64,000 bases of DNA, taken from positions 124,001 through 188,000 of the IMG/VR virus record IMGVR_UViG_3300043399_000877; one strand, written 5' to 3'. Below the pieces are notes generated by a model. The model did no database searches. It was not told where the DNA came from and was given only the letters and a program-made list of their open reading frames with translations. Both the position numbers and the translations under genes were made by a program. Position 1 is the stretch's first letter, and the number at the start of each line of letters is the position of its first letter. This document shows, one piece after another, positions 58,215-64,000 of this stretch.

Positions 58215-61200
58215 TTATTCTCCAATTGCAAGTATATATGGTGTTAGAGTTGAGTACAACGATTTTCTGAACACCCGACCTTCGATAATACCCTTGGCAC
58301 GGTTTATCTTGAGCTGTGTACCTATCTTAAAGTCACCGCGCTGGTCAGTTGCTGTAAAGTAAACTCTACCACCATTTGCTTCAACTATTTCGTTACCTTC
58401 TACCGGGGTACCACCCAAATATGGTAGAGCTATGTTGATATCAGTACCAGATCCAATCCATTCAAAAGTATGACTACTTGAAGTTATCAAACTAAGTTGG
58501 TGGAACGAGACTGCTATATTCGGATTAATAACACCTTCACGTATTTCTTCTTCTATAGTTATGAGTGCATTGTAACGATTGTCAAGCAATTCCTCAACTA
58601 CATCAAACAAGTCTTCAAGAATGTTTGCCTCTGTTGATGTAGCTGCTGGTAGCGACGTATCTTGAATTTCAACAGTGTTTAATGCGGTTACTGGACTGTT
58701 TACAACGCAAAGTTTTGCAACATCTTTTACATAATTAAATGTGTCTATGCTTGCAGCAATTTCGTTATTTGGGATCTGTTGCACACCACCGTTAAAGTAT
58801 GATCTTATAGCCACGTTTGTTGCAACATTACCTTGATACAGCATGTCGTATGTAATAGCATCTATTACATAACCCATATCTCTTCTGCAAAGGTCTTCAT
58901 TATACAAATAGTTACCGGATATGTATTCTGTAATTGCTGCTTTCGTAGCATCTTTGTTGGTTTGCATAGTTGCAAACAATGTTACTAAACCGCTGCCGAC
59001 CCAATTTGTAGAAGGATTGATTGTTGAAACTGTGGATTGTGTTTCAACAACACTTATAAGGTTGTCCATTAGTCCTTGAACAGTTAATGATGCGTCAAGT
59101 GAACCCGCAAGTCCAGTTACTTGTGCAACAGTTCCTTGTAGTTCTTCTACATCGAGGTTAACTGCAATTTCACTTAAAATAGTTTTCATATACTTGTATG
59201 CGCCCACGGTTGCCATCTTTTCTGCGGCTGCTACTTGTAGCGTTGATTTTGAATAGTACGCATTTGCTGCTATAACTGTTTCAGTGTTACCACCGTAAGT
59301 CAAGTCATAATATAGTGCGTCTATGATTAAATCAACATCTCGTTCACAAGTTGCTTGGTCATAAACCAGGTTTGGATATCCGCGGTTAATGTACTCAACT
59401 ATTTCAGCTTTTATAAATGCCCGGTTTAGATCAATAAGATTTCTAGCATTTTCATATCCGGAATCATATGCAGTAGGATCCGGAATAATATATGATGGTA
59501 TATTATCGACGCCGTCTCTCAGTATTTCTAGAATAATATTCATATTATCAGTTACTGAATCGACTGCTGTTGGATTTCCAGTCACAGTGTCTATTAAGAT
59601 AGATTTCAAATATCCAAAAGACCCTAGTGTTTGAATTTTTTGATTCTGAGTGACAACAGCAGCGCCATTTCTGTAATAGCTTCTAGCAGCAGTTATGCTA
59701 CGGAAGTTAGAACCAAACATCATGTCATACCCAACAGCATCAACTATCAAGCCAACATCACGCTCACAAAGTCCTACATCATATTCAAAAGTTCCCTCGA
59801 TGTGTTCTATAACTGCTGTTTGGATGTCATTTATGTCAGCTCTAACAAGTGCATTTAGGGTTGTTAATGATGTGTCAACCCACGCAGTGCTTGGATTCAC
59901 TTGTGAAGGTTGTGTTTCAGTGTCTATTATACCTATTATGTTGTCAAGTAATCCCTGTGCAGTGGATGACTCGGGATTTCCTGATGTAAGTGCAGCTATT
60001 AGGGATTTTAAGTATGTTAGTGCGGCCACAGTTGGTGCTTTTTCTGGAAGTGATATTTGCAATTGATTACCGGAGTAGTATGCATTACCAGCTATGGTTG
60101 TTTCAAGATTTCCACCATAAGTCAAATCATAATGCATTGCTTCCAAAATATAGCCCAAGTCGCGCTCACAAGTTGCTTGGTTATAAGACAGTGACGGGTA
60201 GTTTGTGTTTATGTAAGCTATTACCTGTGTTATCAAGCTGGCTCTATTTGTAAATATAGTGTTTCTTACTGATTGCAAGTTCGCATTGTAGCCAGTTGGG
60301 TTAGGCGTTACCGATGCTGGTACTGACGGCAGACCGTTTTCAAGAACATCTATAATTATGTTCATGTTGCTCAACACTGACGCCTCTGCCGAACTTACAC
60401 CGGACACAAAACCGTACATAACGTATTTTAAATAATCTAGTGCGCCAACAGTTGCCTTTTTCTGACTTTGGGTAACAACAGCGGCACCGTTTCTGTAATA
60501 ACTTCTAGCAGCAGTTATGCTACGGAAGTTAGAACCAAACATCATGTCGTACAGTATTGCATCGACAATAATACCCACATCTCTTCTGCAAAGTTCTGCA
60601 TTGTAACTTGCAATCAATGGCAGGTTTTCAACTATGTATGCTGTGCCTTCTTCAATTAAGAATTGGCGGTTTGCTTGAATAATGTCGGCTGCCTTTTTGC
60701 GATTAGCATCAACTCCCACTGGGGTAGCAAAGTCGATCGCTGGGATAGCCAGTTCACCGAACGAAAGTATGTTAATAATCAAATCCATATTTTGTCCGAT
60801 ACTGGCAGCCTGTGTGGTGTTCATGTCTACCAAATCTAGCAGTAGATCTTTTAATTTATACAATGCTGATATGGTTTCAACTGACTGATTATTTCTAACG
60901 TTTATAGCACCAGCTCGCAAGTAACTCGCACCTGCAATTATAGATCTGTAATTGGTTCCAAAAGCCATATCATCTATTACAGCTTCTGCAATCAACCCCA
61001 CATCACGTGAGCATTTCGCTTCATTATACTGGAAGAACGGAAATTCTTTTTCTATATGCTTGATTACTTCAGTTCTCATAAACGGGATTTGTGAAAGCAA
61101 GTATTCACGATCTTCTCTTACTTCAATCGGTTCTTCATCAAAAAACTGTGGTACAATTAACTCATTTTTAATGTTTAATTCACCAACTTCTCTTACAGTA

Positions 61201-63128
61201 TAATAATTTGTATCACCAAAGAACCTGACAGCATCGCCAATATTTGGCTTCTTAATAAGTCTATCCATCACAAACTGGTTGGTTTGCGGTTGAGAAACTA
61301 CTCTACCGTAATAAAGTGGAGTACTTACACCGTCTGCTTTTAGTGCGTAATTACCAAATGTACTGTTGCTGTTCGTTATTGATGTAAATCCACCCTTTTC
61401 GCAAAGGAATGCAACATCACAGCAAATTGTAAACAAGCTCACAAGCTGAGTATTTCCACGGTTAAGCATGTGTATACCAATACCACCTTGGTTATATTGA
61501 GTAAACGCATCACATACCATTGACTTCAAACCATCAGAGTGATTTCCGTCAACTCGCATGCCTGTTCCAGTTGTGGTTAATGATGTACAGTTTTGAACAT
61601 ACGGGCTCTGTGTAATGAATCCAGCGCCGGTTCCGTCATTTGCAAAAGCAACAGCAGCACTTGGTGCAAGATGATCTTTAAAGGTTACTTGTGTTATGTA
61701 AGAACCGTTATATACCCAGAACATATCTTGAGTTCTATTAAGCGGTCTTATAGTCACAGTTCTCAAGCTATCACCGACTAGCGATACCCGCGCTGGAAGT
61801 CGAAGTGGGTTGTCGATCACATATACACCACTTTTAATATAAATTGTAATAGGGTCAAATTCTGATGGTGGCTGTGTTGCTCGAATTAATTGCACAACCT
61901 CGAGGGCTCTGTCAATAGTTTTAAAAGGTTCTGAAAGCGTTGTACCGTCGTTTTCATCGTTACCGCTTTCATCTGAAACGTAATAAACATTGTTTACACG
62001 GTCAGCAATACCGATTTCTCTAACAGTATCTATAGCGTTTTTACTTCGTTTAAAGTATACTTTACCATCGGTATTGTTTACAAAAAGTTCAGCTTTTTCA
62101 AGTGTTGACGCAGGTGGTATGTACCCAATTAAATCGGTATTTTTTAATATTATAATACTATCTTGAATTCTGCCTTGTTCAAAGAGAGTATTTTTAATTC
62201 TACTACCTGGTAGAACTTCTAAGTCACCAGTCACTGCCAATTCAGTTTTTAAATTTGTTATACCACCAACAGCGCCGATGTTGATTACTTGCCCAGCACC
62301 AAATGCGTTTATTGTTGAAGAATTTGTGTTGAAAAGATTTACATTTGGTTTAGTTGTTTCGAGATCAGTTTTAAAGCTAACTTTATCTTCAAAAAATTCA
62401 GTTGTCGTAGTTCCATCTATAGATATTTTAGCATAACTTGATGGATATCCTTCTTCTGTAGAAAAAACTTCAACTCGAGTATTGCCTTCTGGTACTGGCG
62501 CAACTATTTTGTTTTGCCAGTTATACAAGTTATAAGCAGTTACATAATCGATCATACCTCGCACGTTTACAAGTGCGTCATCATCTTTAGGATCGGCTAA
62601 GTTGTTTGGATTTTCGTCGTTAAATTCAATGTATCCAGTTTCTGAATCATAAACGAAAACTTGTTGCTCATAATCGGTTGTATTCTTAACAGTGACAATT
62701 CCGGTACCGGATCCGACTAGATAAAGATCCTGATTGTCATCTGTTAAGATAGCTCTAGTATAAAGCGATGCTAGATCCTGATTTTCGTATGTTAAACTAA
62801 ATGAACCAGTTCTTGTAGAATCTGAAACTGGATCGTACCAAGTTTTGGATTCATCAAAAAGTATTCTTGCTTTGGGTTCTGAACCACGATCTATTAATAC
62901 ACCAGAAACACCAAGGGTTACGCCGGCACCGGTTTCGCCCTTGTTAATTACTATAACATTGTCGGTGATATCTAAATCTTGTGACTCAACACTGGTTGTC
63001 GTACCGTAAACAACCATGTTACCTTTAACGTATACTGTACCAGTATTGTCAGTATCTAGAGTAATATTACCCCCTGGATTAACTATTAACTGGTAGTCAT
63101 CTACGCCGTATAGATCAATTTTAGACAT
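58215..63128 (-). CDS. Very large putative virion protein: beta-helix-like domain with six tandem phycobiliprotein-like helical repeats
   Basis: 1637 aa; VYYVSDESGNDENDG..FKTIDRAL...SGVY...SLVGDSLRTVTIRP; six CxRD repeats; C-terminal SSSHTFEWIGSG...TDQRGDFKIG. Confidence 0.85.
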   Translation of the reverse strand: MSKIDLYGVDDYQLIVNPGGNITLDTDNTGTVYVKGNMVVYGTTTSVESQDLDITDNVIVINKGETGAGVTLGVSGVLIDRGSEPKARILFDESKTWYDPVSDSTRTGSFSLTYENQDLASLYTRAILTDDNQDLYLVGSGTGIVTVKNTTDYEQQVFVYDSETGYIEFNDENPNNLADPKDDDALVNVRGMIDYVTAYNLYNWQNKIVAPVPEGNTRVEVFSTEEGYPSSYAKISIDGTTTTEFFEDKVSFKTDLETTKPNVNLFNTNSSTINAFGAGQVINIGAVGGITNLKTELAVTGDLEVLPGSRIKNTLFEQGRIQDSIIILKNTDLIGYIPPASTLEKAELFVNNTDGKVYFKRSKNAIDTVREIGIADRVNNVYYVSDESGNDENDGTTLSEPFKTIDRALEVVQLIRATQPPSEFDPITIYIKSGVYVIDNPLRLPARVSLVGDSLRTVTIRPLNRTQDMFWVYNGSYITQVTFKDHLAPSAAVAFANDGTGAGFITQSPYVQNCTSLTTTGTGMRVDGNHSDGLKSMVCDAFTQYNQGGIGIHMLNRGNTQLVSLFTICCDVAFLCEKGGFTSITNSNSTFGNYALKADGVSTPLYYGRVVSQPQTNQFVMDRLIKKPNIGDAVRFFGDTNYYTVREVGELNIKNELIVPQFFDEEPIEVREDREYLLSQIPFMRTEVIKHIEKEFPFFQYNEAKCSRDVGLIAEAVIDDMAFGTNYRSIIAGASYLRAGAINVRNNQSVETISALYKLKDLLLDLVDMNTTQAASIGQNMDLIINILSFGELAIPAIDFATPVGVDANRKKAADIIQANRQFLIEEGTAYIVENLPLIASYNAELCRRDVGIIVDAILYDMMFGSNFRSITAARSYYRNGAAVVTQSQKKATVGALDYLKYVMYGFVSGVSSAEASVLSNMNIIIDVLENGLPSVPASVTPNPTGYNANLQSVRNTIFTNRASLITQVIAYINTNYPSLSYNQATCERDLGYILEAMHYDLTYGGNLETTIAGNAYYSGNQLQISLPEKAPTVAALTYLKSLIAALTSGNPESSTAQGLLDNIIGIIDTETQPSQVNPSTAWVDTSLTTLNALVRADINDIQTAVIEHIEGTFEYDVGLCERDVGLIVDAVGYDMMFGSNFRSITAARSYYRNGAAVVTQNQKIQTLGSFGYLKSILIDTVTGNPTAVDSVTDNMNIILEILRDGVDNIPSYIIPDPTAYDSGYENARNLIDLNRAFIKAEIVEYINRGYPNLVYDQATCERDVDLIIDALYYDLTYGGNTETVIAANAYYSKSTLQVAAAEKMATVGAYKYMKTILSEIAVNLDVEELQGTVAQVTGLAGSLDASLTVQGLMDNLISVVETQSTVSTINPSTNWVGSGLVTLFATMQTNKDATKAAITEYISGNYLYNEDLCRRDMGYVIDAITYDMLYQGNVATNVAIRSYFNGGVQQIPNNEIAASIDTFNYVKDVAKLCVVNSPVTALNTVEIQDTSLPAATSTEANILEDLFDVVEELLDNRYNALITIEEEIREGVINPNIAVSFHQLSLITSSSHTFEWIGSGTDINIALPYLGGTPVEGNEIVEANGGRVYFTATDQRGDFKIGTQLKINRAKGIIEGRVFRKSLYSTLTPYILAIGE

Positions 63129-63145: not shown

Positions 63146-63535
63146 TTAGATAGCTGTTAGTACTATGTAATCGTTTGAAGAATCGTTTTCTAGATACCAT
63201 GTATAGCGATTACCACTAAAGTCTTTTGCAGTTCTCTTGTTGATTTTTGCTAGGTTTATTTCTGCACCGCTGTTAGATGCAACGTAACCAAACAGTCTCA
63301 TTTCTTTAGCAGCACTCGGTGCACCGTCTTTTAACACGCAAGTTATATATTTGGTGCTATCACCTATATCGCCAACACGGCAAACGCGAAATGTTTTTGC
63401 GCCACGTTGTTTTAAAATTACACCGTCTGTACGTAGTGCAGTTCCATCGTGAAACTCAACACGCACACCAGTATTGCTTGCAAAAGTACCGATTACGTCA
63501 GTACCAAACACATCTTTTCTTAGAGGTCGTCCCAT
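63146..63535 (-). CDS. Small hypothetical (likely late/virion) protein
   Basis: MGRPLRKDVFG...ILKQRGAKTFRV; AGGAG SD and late motif upstream. Confidence 0.8.
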   Translation of the reverse strand: MGRPLRKDVFGTDVIGTFASNTGVRVEFHDGTALRTDGVILKQRGAKTFRVCRVGDIGDSTKYITCVLKDGAPSAAKEMRLFGYVASNSGAEINLAKINKRTAKDFSGNRYTWYLENDSSNDYIVLTAI

Positions 63536-63540
63536 TTATT

Positions 63541-63607
63541 TCTCCTTTTGACGTTCTAGGTCATACGCCGGGAAGCGTAAGTCCGTGAGGACATTTACAT
63601 GACATAG
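63541..63607 (-). ncRNA. Candidate structured cis-regulatory RNA leader (three-way junction / alternative hairpin)
   Basis: Outer stem 63607-63599 with 63564-63556 (8/9 pairs) encloses hairpins GUCC/GGAC and ACGC/GCGU; competing UGAC/GUCA hairpin next to the SD; ATAAATA at 63614-63608. Confidence 0.5.
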
Positions 63608-63629
63608 TATTTATCAAATGGAGGTAAGA

Positions 63630-63656
63630 ATAAAAAAGCCCGTTTAACACGGGCTT
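63630..63656 (-). terminator. Intrinsic terminator
   Basis: AAGCCCGT (63636-63643) / ACGGGCTT (63649-63656) followed by a U-tract on -. Confidence 0.75.
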
Positions 63657-63921
63657 ATTTTCCAGAAAGTGTAGCAATAAATTCGTGTTTAGAAAATGTT
63701 TTAAACTCTGATACAGCTTTGTTTAAAATATCCTCAGCTTCTTTCTTATATCTGGGATTTTTTGTTTGAGATTGTTTAACTAGCAGTGAGAAATATTCTT
63801 TTTTAAGACGTTCAAATCTTTTCTGAAAAATAACAATCTGTGGTGCGTAACCGGGATGGTTTTTACGCCATTGTTTTATCGTGCGTTCGTATTCGTCCCA
63901 GGATGCATCAATGTTTGTCAT
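63655..63921 (-). CDS. Small helical hypothetical protein
   Basis: 88-aa ORF behind a sigma70-like promoter, no SD. Confidence 0.7.
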   Translation of the reverse strand: MTNIDASWDEYERTIKQWRKNHPGYAPQIVIFQKRFERLKKEYFSLLVKQSQTKNPRYKKEAEDILNKAVSEFKTFSKHEFIATLSGK

Positions 63922-63926
63922 GCTAT

Positions 63927-63964
63927 AATATAAAAAAAATAGCTGTTGTTGTCAACAGCTATTT
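63927..63964 (-). promoter_or_regulatory. Sigma70-like promoter whose -35 box lies in a 12-bp palindrome that also reads as a terminator
   Basis: TTGACA 63955-63950, 17 nt, TATATT 63932-63927; AAATAGCTGTTG-TTGT-CAACAGCTATTT at 63937-63964. Confidence 0.6.
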
Positions 63965-64000
63965 CAGTTATTTTACACAGAGAAGTTTTTATTTAGACGG

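What the first reader, a model, noticed from the sequence alone, without database searches (positions are those of the whole stretch)
63541..63614. Compact multi-stem RNA leader with mutually exclusive pairings next to a Shine-Dalgarno site
Seen (minus strand): ATAAATA promoter motif, then CUAUGUCAU-GUAAAU-GUCC(UCAC)GGAC-UU-ACGC(UUCCCG)GCGU-AUGACCUAG-AACGUCA-AAAGGAG-AAAUAA-AUG. The outer stem GUCAU/AUGAC (extendable to 8 of 9 bp) closes a three-way junction. UGAC can instead pair with the GUCA just before the SD. This is a GC-rich island in AT-rich intergenic DNA. Inference: a translational switch or protein-binding operator for a late gene. I cannot match it to a named Rfam family.
Basis: partly seen in the sequence, partly recalled or inferred. 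Interest (0 to 1): 0.6.

Follow-up and report, generated by a model that had tools for sequence, protein, structure and literature searches.

The report
Phage late-gene leader RNA (freshwater-2 family)
The flagged stretch is a real, conserved structured 5' leader RNA, a divergent copy of the orphan Rfam motif "freshwater-2". It follows a T4-type late promoter in an uncultured freshwater jumbo phage, and one of its hairpin loops appears to base-pair with the start codon of the virion-module gene it precedes.

Summary
Window 63530-63615 (-) holds, in order: a T4-type late promoter (GATAAATA); variable hairpin P1 (GUCC/GGAC); an invariant CUUA junction; hairpin P2 (ACGCU/GGCGU); hairpin P3 (UGAC/GUCA, loop CUAGAAC); AAGGAG; and the AUG.

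It scores below threshold for Rfam RF02980 freshwater-2 (29.6 bits against a 49.9 cut-off). However, 46 of 47 viral contigs with an orthologous protein carry the same leader, and several of those pass the cut-off.

On 103 aligned leaders, P2 is 99.7% paired and P3 96.7% paired, both with abundant compensatory changes.

A new observation: the 3' end of the P2 loop, (C)CCA, is complementary to the start region (A)UGG(G). It becomes GCCA where the second codon changes from Gly (GGN) to Ala (GCN) (Fisher p = 4e-18; five protein clusters).

The motif is virus-specific, always lies behind NTAAATA, and always precedes one protein superfamily beginning MGRP..., located in the T4-like head gene module.

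The most likely function is control of translation initiation by occluding the start codon, probably with a trans-acting factor. This mechanism is inferred, not shown. The element is a new member of a known but functionally orphan family.

The parts
63632..63654 (-). Intrinsic terminator of the upstream 88-aa gene: GCCCG-UGUUAAA-CGGGC followed by U6. It isolates the leader from upstream transcription.
   Evidence: Sequence read. It is the cause of the spurious Rfam 'Trp_leader' hit.
63608..63615 (-). T4-type late promoter GATAAATA (NATAAATA class).
   Evidence: All 131 unique family leaders have NTAAATA 66-122 nt upstream of the ATG. In the window, 18 of 22 ATAAATA sites lie on the coding strand and at least 12 sit just upstream of ORFs. 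NATAAATA/TATAAATA is the late promoter of T4-like phages (PMC2984593).
63581..63592 (-). P1: variable hairpin GUCC-UCAC-GGAC.
   Evidence: -3.7 kcal/mol. 113 of 130 family leaders have a hairpin of different sequence ending 0-2 nt before CUUA; 17 lack it. The closest relative, L144, has GUUC/GAAC.
63578..63581 (-). Invariant junction CUUA. The A opens P2.
   Evidence: C, U, U and A are invariant or nearly so in 103 aligned leaders.
63565..63578 (-). P2: ACGCU / GGCGU with loop UCCC.
   Evidence: Family P2 is 99.7% paired. One pair is GC 53 / UA 27 / AU 18 / CG 1. Pair 64-84 is U.G in 95, C-G in 4 (window type) and U-A in 2.
63569..63573 (-). 5' strand of the proposed pseudoknot: P2 loop UCCC(G).
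   Evidence: Complementary to (U)GGGA at 63534-63530. Family-wide covariation with CDS position +5.
63549..63563 (-). P3: UGAC-CUAGAAC-GUCA, with a 7-nt loop that is nearly invariant in the family.
   Evidence: P3 is 96.7% paired, with 3-5 pair types at each of three positions. Loop U, A, A, A, C are 100% conserved and G is 97%.
63542..63547 (-). Shine-Dalgarno AAGGAG, 6 nt before the AUG and 1 nt after P3.
63530..63535 (-). Start codon AUG plus GGA. U34-A30 form the 3' strand of the proposed pseudoknot.
63146..63535 (-). Regulated gene: 129-aa 'MGRP' protein. Function unknown, all-beta, SH3/Tudor-like barrel.
   Evidence: No Pfam or PHROG family. About 1000 homologs, all annotated hypothetical. 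AF2 model with pLDDT 83. Fold searches. In relatives it lies behind gp20-gp21-gp23.
58215..63128 (-). Downstream 1637-aa tail-fibre-like gene, 17 nt after the MGRP stop. Probably co-transcribed.
   Evidence: PHROG tail-fibre families, E = 1.5e-101. ORF map.

Best explanation
The element is a divergent member of the freshwater-2 RNA family (Rfam RF02980). It is a cis-acting 5' leader on the late transcript of an 'MGRP' virion-module gene, in an uncultured T4-like jumbo phage of 382 kb from a freshwater metagenome.

Shown:
- The RNA consists of an optional variable hairpin P1, an invariant CUUA junction, hairpin P2, hairpin P3 with the near-invariant loop CUAGAAC placed against the Shine-Dalgarno site, and then the AUG.
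- P2 and P3 are maintained by compensatory changes on the sense strand.
- The 3' end of the P2 loop covaries with the first bases of the coding sequence.

Inferred:
- The P2 loop pairs with (A)UGG(G/C). In the window this is UCCC(G) with (U)GGGA. The result is an H-type pseudoknot that encloses P3 and the SD and holds the start codon in a helix.
- This gates translation initiation of the MGRP gene, and by coupling perhaps the gene behind it.
- The invariant unpaired bases (CUUA, A after P2, CUAGAAC) are most simply explained as the contact surface for a trans-acting factor that stabilises or opens this fold. That factor would more likely be a protein than a metabolite.
For: Family identity:
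- Rfam hit over the full model length, including GGACUUAYGC..GCGUA..CUAGAAC..AAGGAGAAA..AUG.
- Orthologous leaders pass the gathering score: L019 74.5, L014 70.2, L037 52.5, and L009 50.1, whose protein is 79% identical to the window's.
- 46 of 47 loci fetched by protein homology alone carry the leader.

Structure:
- Covariation score 0.328 against 0.091 when shuffled (0 of 500 shuffles reach it); slid controls are 0.053 or lower.
- The U.G pair in 95 of 101 sequences only works as RNA on this strand.

Pseudoknot:
- The loop base 5' of the loop's 'CC' is C 93, A 25, U 7, G 3 when CDS position +5 is G.
- It is G 19, U 3 when +5 is C. Fisher p = 4e-18.
- G with C is found in 5 protein clusters at 50% identity.
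- A search for GCCA loops, blind to the start codon, returned 29 of 31 loci with ATGGC.
- The near-identical proteins in L107 (AUGGGC, loop CGCCU) and in L189/L204 (AUGGCA, loop AGCCA) differ in exactly this way.

Specificity:
- The pattern gave at least 120 viral contigs, nearly all followed by SD plus ATGG and an MGRP-type ORF.
- In 596 Gbp of prokaryotic genomes, only 3 of 59 matches are real, all in MAG contigs.
- 119 of 137 downstream ORFs hit one HMM.

Late-gene context.
Against: - No experiment and no transcript ends are available. The only RNA run holds a contig elsewhere in the operon.
- The pseudoknot is short (3-5 bp). In a fixed column register only 72.8% of cells pair.
- 25 leaders have only CCA/UGG, and three Ala-type leaders (L060 group) keep UCCA.
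- The Gly-to-Ala switch may have happened only a few times.
- With a near-perfect SD left single-stranded, the fold might barely reduce translation.
- MGRP homologs in the cultured jumbo phages Atu_ph07 and Phosso keep the late promoter and the MGRP N-terminus but have short plain leaders. The element is therefore dispensable for this gene family.
- No factor or ligand is identified.
Confidence: 0.6

Rival explanations
1. A three-way junction closed by GUCAU/AUGAC acts as a switch, because UGAC can pair either with the 5' GUCA(U) or with the GUCA next to the SD.
For: In this one sequence both folds are possible and isoenergetic, at -12.1 and -11.9 kcal/mol. The MFE fold uses the outer stem. 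L144 has the same 5' sequence.
Against: The outer stem pairs in 48.2% of cells, against 45.6% shuffled and up to 43.5% slid. The 5' 'UGUC' is kept when P3 is GCGG, GUGG, CAGC, UUAC or GGC, so it does not covary with P3. Relatives with the same P2/P3 type (L107, L162, L204) lack it. A T4-type late start about 6 nt after TATAAATA would remove part of the 5' arm (general knowledge of T4 late promoters).
Confidence: 0.08
2. Autogenous operator. The MGRP protein itself, when not yet assembled into virions, binds the leader and represses its own translation, as T4 gp32 and gp43 and ribosomal protein S15 do.
For: There is an exclusive one-to-one link between leader and MGRP genes, including paralogs in one genome. 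The unpaired bases are invariant. The protein core resembles SH3/Tudor/KOW barrels, some of which bind RNA (Z = 5.3). There is precedent in T4 (PMC3014915).
Against: The fold match is weak and generic. The conserved MGRP N-terminus is also present where the leader is absent. There are no binding data. Paralogs differ widely outside the N-terminal half.
Confidence: 0.2
3. Small-molecule riboswitch, with an H-type pseudoknot aptamer like SAM-II, preQ1-II or guanidine-III.
For: It has a compact pseudoknot with a highly conserved core in a 5' UTR that sequesters the initiation region. Phage-borne riboswitches exist: two glutamine riboswitches lie next to one family member.
Against: It controls only one family of late virion-module proteins with no metabolic link. 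The preQ1-II Rfam hit is below threshold and rests on the SD region. No ligand candidate exists.
Confidence: 0.1
4. Constitutive element with no switch. A 5' structure protects the late mRNA from nucleases, or insulates and enhances the ribosome-binding site for very high expression.
For: The SD is strong and unpaired in the short form. P1 lies near the 5' end. Structure protects T4 messages from RegB cleavage at GGAG (PMC3014915). A likely Atu_ph07 homolog is an abundant virion protein: 35.15 kDa calculated against gp498 at 35.16 kDa with 75.5% coverage.
Against: Generic protection does not explain the invariant loop and junction bases, or the covariation with the start codon. Other late genes in the same window manage with 14-36 nt between promoter and ATG.
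Confidence: 0.2
5. DNA-level signal: a binding site near the promoter, or a recombination cassette boundary.
For: It always lies next to the late promoter, and the 5' coding sequence is conserved.
Against: Compensatory changes preserve pairing, not sequence. The dominant U.G pair would be A.C on the other strand or in DNA.
Confidence: 0.02

Closest known systems
Rfam RF02980 freshwater-2 RNA (Weinberg et al. 2017, PMC5737381; motif from freshwater metagenomes, function unknown)
   Same: Same three hairpins, same conserved strings (GGACUUAUGC, GCGUA, CUAGAAC, AAGGAGAAAA..AUG), same position before an ORF, same habitat.
   Different: The window copy scores 29.6 bits against a cut-off of 49.9. 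It has a short P2 (5 bp, C-G instead of U.G at pair 2), a 4-bp UGAC P3, and lacks the CGGACUUCU spacer of the seed-like long form. The viral origin, late promoter, MGRP link and start-codon pseudoknot are not in the main text of the 2017 paper, which does not mention the motif. As far as I recall, they are not in the Rfam description either.
T4 gene 32 mRNA pseudoknot operator (autogenous translational repression)
   Same: A T4-type phage, a 5'-leader pseudoknot, and control at translation initiation (PMC3014915).
   Different: The gene 32 pseudoknot lies 67 nt upstream of the AUG and nucleates cooperative binding over an A+U-rich tract. Here the pseudoknot would contain the AUG itself. It is on a late gene rather than an early/middle one. 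There is no sequence similarity.
E. coli rpsO (S15) and thrS operators (from memory)
   Same: A hairpin loop pairs with the start region (rpsO). A hairpin with a 7-nt anticodon-like loop abuts the SD (thrS). Both are repressed by a protein that traps or excludes the 30S subunit.
   Different: There is no homology, the binder here is unknown, and the element is phage-encoded.
Pseudoknot riboswitches (SAM-II, preQ1-II, guanidine-III)
   Same: Comparable size, H-type topology, and occlusion of the initiation region.
   Different: Those sequester the SD and sit before metabolic or transport genes. The preQ1-II model scores only 26.6 bits against a cut-off of 47.

Membership tests
Rfam RF02980 freshwater-2 | Covariance-model score at or above the gathering score (49.9 bits) | tested here: not met
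   The window scores 29.6 bits, E = 0.024 on 1 kb, and is lost in the 64-kb scan. Orthologous leaders score 50.1-74.5 bits.
Rfam RF02980 freshwater-2 | Homology to accepted members (same position before orthologous genes, alignable throughout) | tested here: met
   46 of 47 loci with orthologous proteins carry it. A model built from them scores the window at 71.3 bits.
Rfam RF02980 freshwater-2 | Three consecutive hairpins with conserved junction and loop sequences, followed by SD and AUG | tested here: met
   Full-length model alignment 1-84. P2 and P3 covariation. P1.
Rfam RF02980 freshwater-2 | Freshwater or aquatic metagenomic origin | tested here: met
   Runs holding the window come from freshwater, estuary, wastewater, retting, aquaculture, activated-sludge, sediment and 'outdoor' metagenomes.
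T4 gene 32-type autoregulatory pseudoknot | [quoted passage not shown] | tested here: not met
   The downstream gene is an MGRP protein in the head gene module, not gp32. The architecture differs. Binding is not testable with these tools.
preQ1-II riboswitch (RF01054) | Score at or above 47 bits with the aptamer core | tested here: not met
   26.6 bits. The alignment rests on the terminator hairpin and the SD.
Metabolite riboswitch in general | Ligand-dependent structural change | not testable with these tools
   No ligand candidate. The gene context is structural.
T4-type late transcription unit | NATAAATA/TATAAATA -10 element in a genome with T4-like core genes | tested here: met
   GATAAATA at 63615-63608. 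131 of 131 leaders have it. gp23 is present in the own genome. gp20, gp21 and gp23 are present in relatives. The array of sites before ORFs is. gp55 itself was not searched.

The most novel reading that the evidence does not exclude
The freshwater-2 leader is a protein-responsive translational operator in which the start codon is locked into a pseudoknot. Uncultured T4-like jumbo phages would use it to tie synthesis of a whole family of virion-module (MGRP) proteins to assembly, for example by feedback from unassembled MGRP protein. This would be the first family-wide structured operator for late genes in T4-type phages.
Probability: 0.25. Interest if true: 0.7.

Novelty: new member of a known kind. 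Interest (0 to 1): 0.5.

Why it matters
To my knowledge, freshwater-2 has stood in Rfam since 2017 as an orphan motif: no organism, no gene function and no mechanism. This window and its relatives place it in T4-like large and jumbo phages, directly behind a late promoter and in front of a single protein superfamily that sits next to the capsid genes. They also give a concrete, mutationally testable structural hypothesis, namely pairing of the P2 loop with the start codon. Apart from T4 gene 32, structured translational operators are hardly known in T4-type phages, and none is known for late genes. The practical limit is that no cultured phage carrying the leader was found.

Tried and rejected
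- Single-sequence folding does not distinguish the element from shuffles.
- The Rfam hits Trp_leader, preQ1-II and the sRNA families are explained by the terminator and the SD.
- The second weak RF02980 hit in the own genome is only a late promoter, a hairpin and an SD. The own genome holds one leader and one MGRP gene.
- blastn and tblastn against 50,697 cultured-phage records found no leader and no close protein.
- Atu_ph07 and Phosso have distant MGRP genes without the leader.
- Sequencing runs: 20 holders, and the only RNA run is kept as contigs. Its one contig (62619-62887) lies in the tail-fibre gene and says nothing about transcript ends.
- Protein function stayed open:
  - Pfam, PHROGs, Foldseek against PDB, and the ESM Atlas gave nothing.
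  - BFVD gave only uncharacterized phage proteins.
  - VIA-wide gave weak SH3/Tudor-like matches.
- The word search sees only proteins of 0.55-1.75 times the query length. Longer MGRP relatives (up to 453 aa) were found through the leader instead. The large representative search was not used.
- Looked for by eye and by mutual information, but not supported:
  - pairing of the P3 loop with 5' UCUA or 3' UUCU;
  - pairing of GGAC with GUCC in codons 3-4;
  - an association of the long-form spacer with the Arg codon.
- The long form has a possible anti-SD hairpin (CUUCU..AGGAG). It cannot covary because the SD is invariant, and it is absent from the window.
- ARAGORN finds no tRNA-like gene.
- Papers: 'freshwater-2' occurs in no held paper, and no supplement of the 2017 paper is held.

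Full report
WHAT IS THERE.
Read on the minus strand, the intergenic stretch between an 88-aa ORF (63655-63921) and a 129-aa ORF (63146-63535) contains the following, in order:
- an intrinsic terminator (63654-63632);
- GATAAATA (63615-63608);
- 15 nt of A/U-rich sequence beginning CUAUGUCAU;
- hairpin GUCC-UCAC-GGAC (63592-63581);
- UU;
- hairpin ACGCU-UCCC-GGCGU (63578-63565);
- A;
- hairpin UGAC-CUAGAAC-GUCA (63563-63549);
- AAGGAG (63547-63542);
- AUG (63535-63533).

The structured core is 57% G+C in a 40.6% window.

Taken alone, the sequence does not fold better than shuffles (z = -0.49).

WHERE IT COMES FROM.
The window is bases 124001-188000 of a 381,886-bp virus record judged complete. 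It was assembled from a freshwater metagenome, and close relatives occur in estuary, wastewater and other aquatic samples.

The genome encodes a T4-type major capsid protein about 1 kb beyond the window's end. In related 270-360-kb contigs the gene order is Portal_T4, prohead protease S77, a 365-aa gene, Gp23, an 87-89-aa gene, and then the homolog of the 129-aa protein.

In the window, ATAAATA occurs as often as chance predicts (22 times). However, 18 sites lie on the coding strand and at least 12 sit 14-78 nt before ORF starts in a module of giant structural genes. This is the NATAAATA/TATAAATA late promoter of T4-like phages (PMC2984593; gp55-dependent according to PMC3014915). The leader studied here is the longest of them, at 73 nt from promoter to ATG.

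FAMILY.
A permissive Rfam scan of 1 kb gave a full-length but sub-threshold match to RF02980 freshwater-2 (29.6 bits, cut-off 49.9). The match aligns UCC..GGACUUACGC..GCGUA-UGAC-CUAGAAC-GUCA..AAAGGAGAAA..AUG.

The link between leader and gene rests on three searches:
- Searching viral contigs with the 129-aa protein gave 47 loci. In 46 of them the same leader precedes the gene. The exception is the second gene of a tandem pair.
- Many of these leaders pass Rfam's own threshold. They include L009, whose protein is 79% identical to the window's.
Nearly all hits are followed by SD, ATGG and an ORF beginning MGRP(L/I/V)xK, or more rarely MA(R/N/K).

As a control, the same pattern in 596 Gbp of prokaryotic genomes gave 59 hits. 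Only 3 are real, and all 3 are on MAG contigs. The motif is therefore virus-specific, and chance matches run at about one per 10 Gbp.

All 131 unique leaders have NTAAATA 66-122 nt before the ATG. 119 of 137 complete downstream ORFs (117-453 aa) match one HMM built from the window's orthologs. The own genome holds a single copy of both leader and gene.

STRUCTURE.
I built a covariance model from 75 diverse leaders and aligned 103 leaders to it. Pair counts on that alignment give the following:
- P2 is paired in 99.7% of cells. One pair is GC 53 / UA 27 / AU 18 / CG 1. Another is U.G 95 / C-G 4 / U-A 2.
- P3 is paired in 96.7% of cells, with three to five pair types at each of three positions.
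- The overall covariation score is 0.328 against 0.091 for shuffles (0 of 500 reach it) and at most 0.053 for slid controls.

The alignment was fitted to P2 and P3, which favours them somewhat. However, the same pairs top an independent mutual-information scan on motif-anchored blocks. The dominant U.G pair shows that the structure acts as RNA of this strand.

P1 cannot be aligned. In 113 of 130 leaders a hairpin of unrelated sequence ends 0-2 nt before CUUA, and 17 leaders have none. P1 is therefore common but dispensable.

The 5' 'UGUC' stays the same whatever P3 is. It is probably part of the initially transcribed sequence. By what is known of T4 late promoters, transcription starts about 6 nt after TATAAATA, that is near 63603-63601. 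That would leave at most GUCAU of the 9-nt arm.

PSEUDOKNOT (new here, inferred).
The 3' end of the P2 loop is almost always (C)CCA or CCA, and the coding sequence almost always starts AUGGG.

Aligning each leader by register and adding three scans for GCCA loops that did not specify the start codon gave 150 unique leaders. The loop base that would face CDS position +5 is distributed as follows:

| CDS position +5 | C | A | U | G |
|---|---|---|---|---|
| G (Gly second codon) | 93 | 25 | 7 | 3 |
| C (Ala second codon) | 0 | 0 | 3 | 19 |

Fisher p = 4e-18. Further points:
- Counting each state once per protein cluster at 50% identity, G with C occurs in 5 clusters, U with C in 1, and G with G in 2.
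- 29 of the 31 GCCA-loop loci start ATGGC.
- L107 and L189/L204 encode nearly identical proteins. They differ in AUGGGC with loop CGCCU against AUGGCA with loop AGCCA.
- In the window the pairing would be U73-A30, C72-G31, C71-G32, C70-G33 and G69.U34.
- The geometry is that of a classical H-type pseudoknot, with P3 and the SD in the long third loop.
- In a fixed column register only 72.8% of cells pair, because CCA-type loops sit one column off. The helix is short, at 3-5 bp.

THE GENE.
The MGRP protein has no Pfam or PHROG family and about 1000 unnamed relatives. Its predicted all-beta fold (pLDDT 83) resembles SH3/Tudor/KOW barrels in residues 13-83, but only weakly (Z = 5.3; nothing from Foldseek against PDB).

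BFVD links it to uncharacterized proteins of the 490-kb Agrobacterium phage Atu_ph07. There, AUZ95257 begins MGRPISKKFIG. It follows GATAAATA and a plain 26-nt leader with no freshwater-2 fold. Its calculated mass of 35.15 kDa equals that of 'gp498' (35.16 kDa, 23 peptides, 75.5% coverage) in the published virion proteome (PMC6102473 supplement). This identification rests on mass alone and is tentative.

Sinorhizobium phage Phosso is similar: it has AATAAATA, a plain leader, and a protein beginning MGRPLKKSFFG. The protein family is therefore wider than the RNA. The conserved MGRP N-terminus is a protein feature to which the loop is matched, not the reverse.

HOW IT PROBABLY WORKS.
Shown: a conserved sense-strand RNA fold directly in front of, and apparently pairing with, the initiation codon of one family of late genes.

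Inferred: the fold limits or gates 30S binding and start-codon selection. The invariant unpaired bases (CUUA, the A after P2, and CUAGAAC, a 7-nt loop with the Y-U-NNN-R-N pattern of U-turn loops) are a recognition surface for a factor.

Candidate readings, with my odds, are given under the rival explanations:
- feedback by MGRP protein;
- another phage or host protein;
- a metabolite;
- no factor at all (stability or insulation).

The long, Rfam-seed-like form adds CGGACUUCU, which could pair with the SD. The window lacks this.

COMPARISON AND VERDICT.
It works most like the protein-controlled operators of T4 gene 32, E. coli rpsO and thrS, or like small pseudoknot riboswitches. It is a member of none of them. 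It is a homolog of freshwater-2, although it fails that model's score cut-off.

I rate it a new member of a known, functionally orphan family. The useful new context is its phage origin, the late promoter, the single gene family it precedes, and the start-codon pseudoknot.

All ORFs were read with table 11.

Noticed in passing
L106:2284-2395 (-), next to L106:1992-2106 (-): Two tandem glutamine riboswitches (RF01739, 61.1 and 52.8 bits) lie immediately upstream of a freshwater-2 leader on one viral contig. This hints that some carriers are cyanophage-like.
   Followed up: no
window 1-64000, e.g. 6952, 11679, 13239, 16395, 21173, 37420, 39216, 42985, 44635, 45705, 54106 (-): ATAAATA occurs at chance frequency overall. 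However, 18 of 22 sites are on the coding strand and at least 12 sit 14-78 nt before ORF starts. This is an array of late promoters in a structural module with giant ORFs of 2967, 2111, 1637, 1330, 1105 and 1027 aa.
   Followed up: partly
window 63632-63654 (-) and 63935-63965 (-): Two intrinsic-terminator-like hairpins with U tracts bracket the 88-aa gene. The first causes a spurious Rfam Trp_leader hit.
   Followed up: partly
G000:C1:52315-52362 (-) = L002:1500-1560: TATAAATA, a small hairpin (AUUGCGGAGCGCAAU) and AAGGAGAAAAGAAAUG precede another late gene (MADVTNLQVGG...). This is a weak RF02980 hit caused by the shared SD region, not a family member.
   Followed up: partly
L011:1032-1902; L028:224-331 and 1417-1515; L020:231-316 and 1417-1515; L164:720-834 and 1202-1315: Several phages carry two MGRP paralogs. 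Usually each has its own freshwater-2 leader. In L011 the second paralog follows the first directly, without a leader.
   Followed up: partly
L046:1417-1503: One accepted family member (54.5 bits) has a different P3 loop, GGG-UUUAAA-CCC instead of CUAGAAC. The loop is therefore not absolutely required.
   Followed up: no
L215:5883-6920 (Atu_ph07 360882-361920) and L219:360-1105 (Phosso): Cultured jumbo rhizobiophages have MGRP-type genes behind (G/A)ATAAATA with short unstructured leaders. The Atu_ph07 protein's calculated mass matches an abundant virion protein (gp498) in the published proteome.
   Followed up: partly
L244, L246, L248 (GTDB genome contigs): Three MAG contigs, labelled Rhizobium sp., Crocinitomicaceae (72.8 kb) and Vampirovibrionales, carry true leaders with MGRP genes. 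They are probably phage contigs binned with bacteria, and are at best a weak host hint.
   Followed up: no
window 62619-62887: A 269-nt contig from a metatranscriptome library, differing in 6 of its 269 letters, lies in the tail-fibre-like gene downstream of the leader. It cannot show transcription or transcript ends.
   Followed up: no
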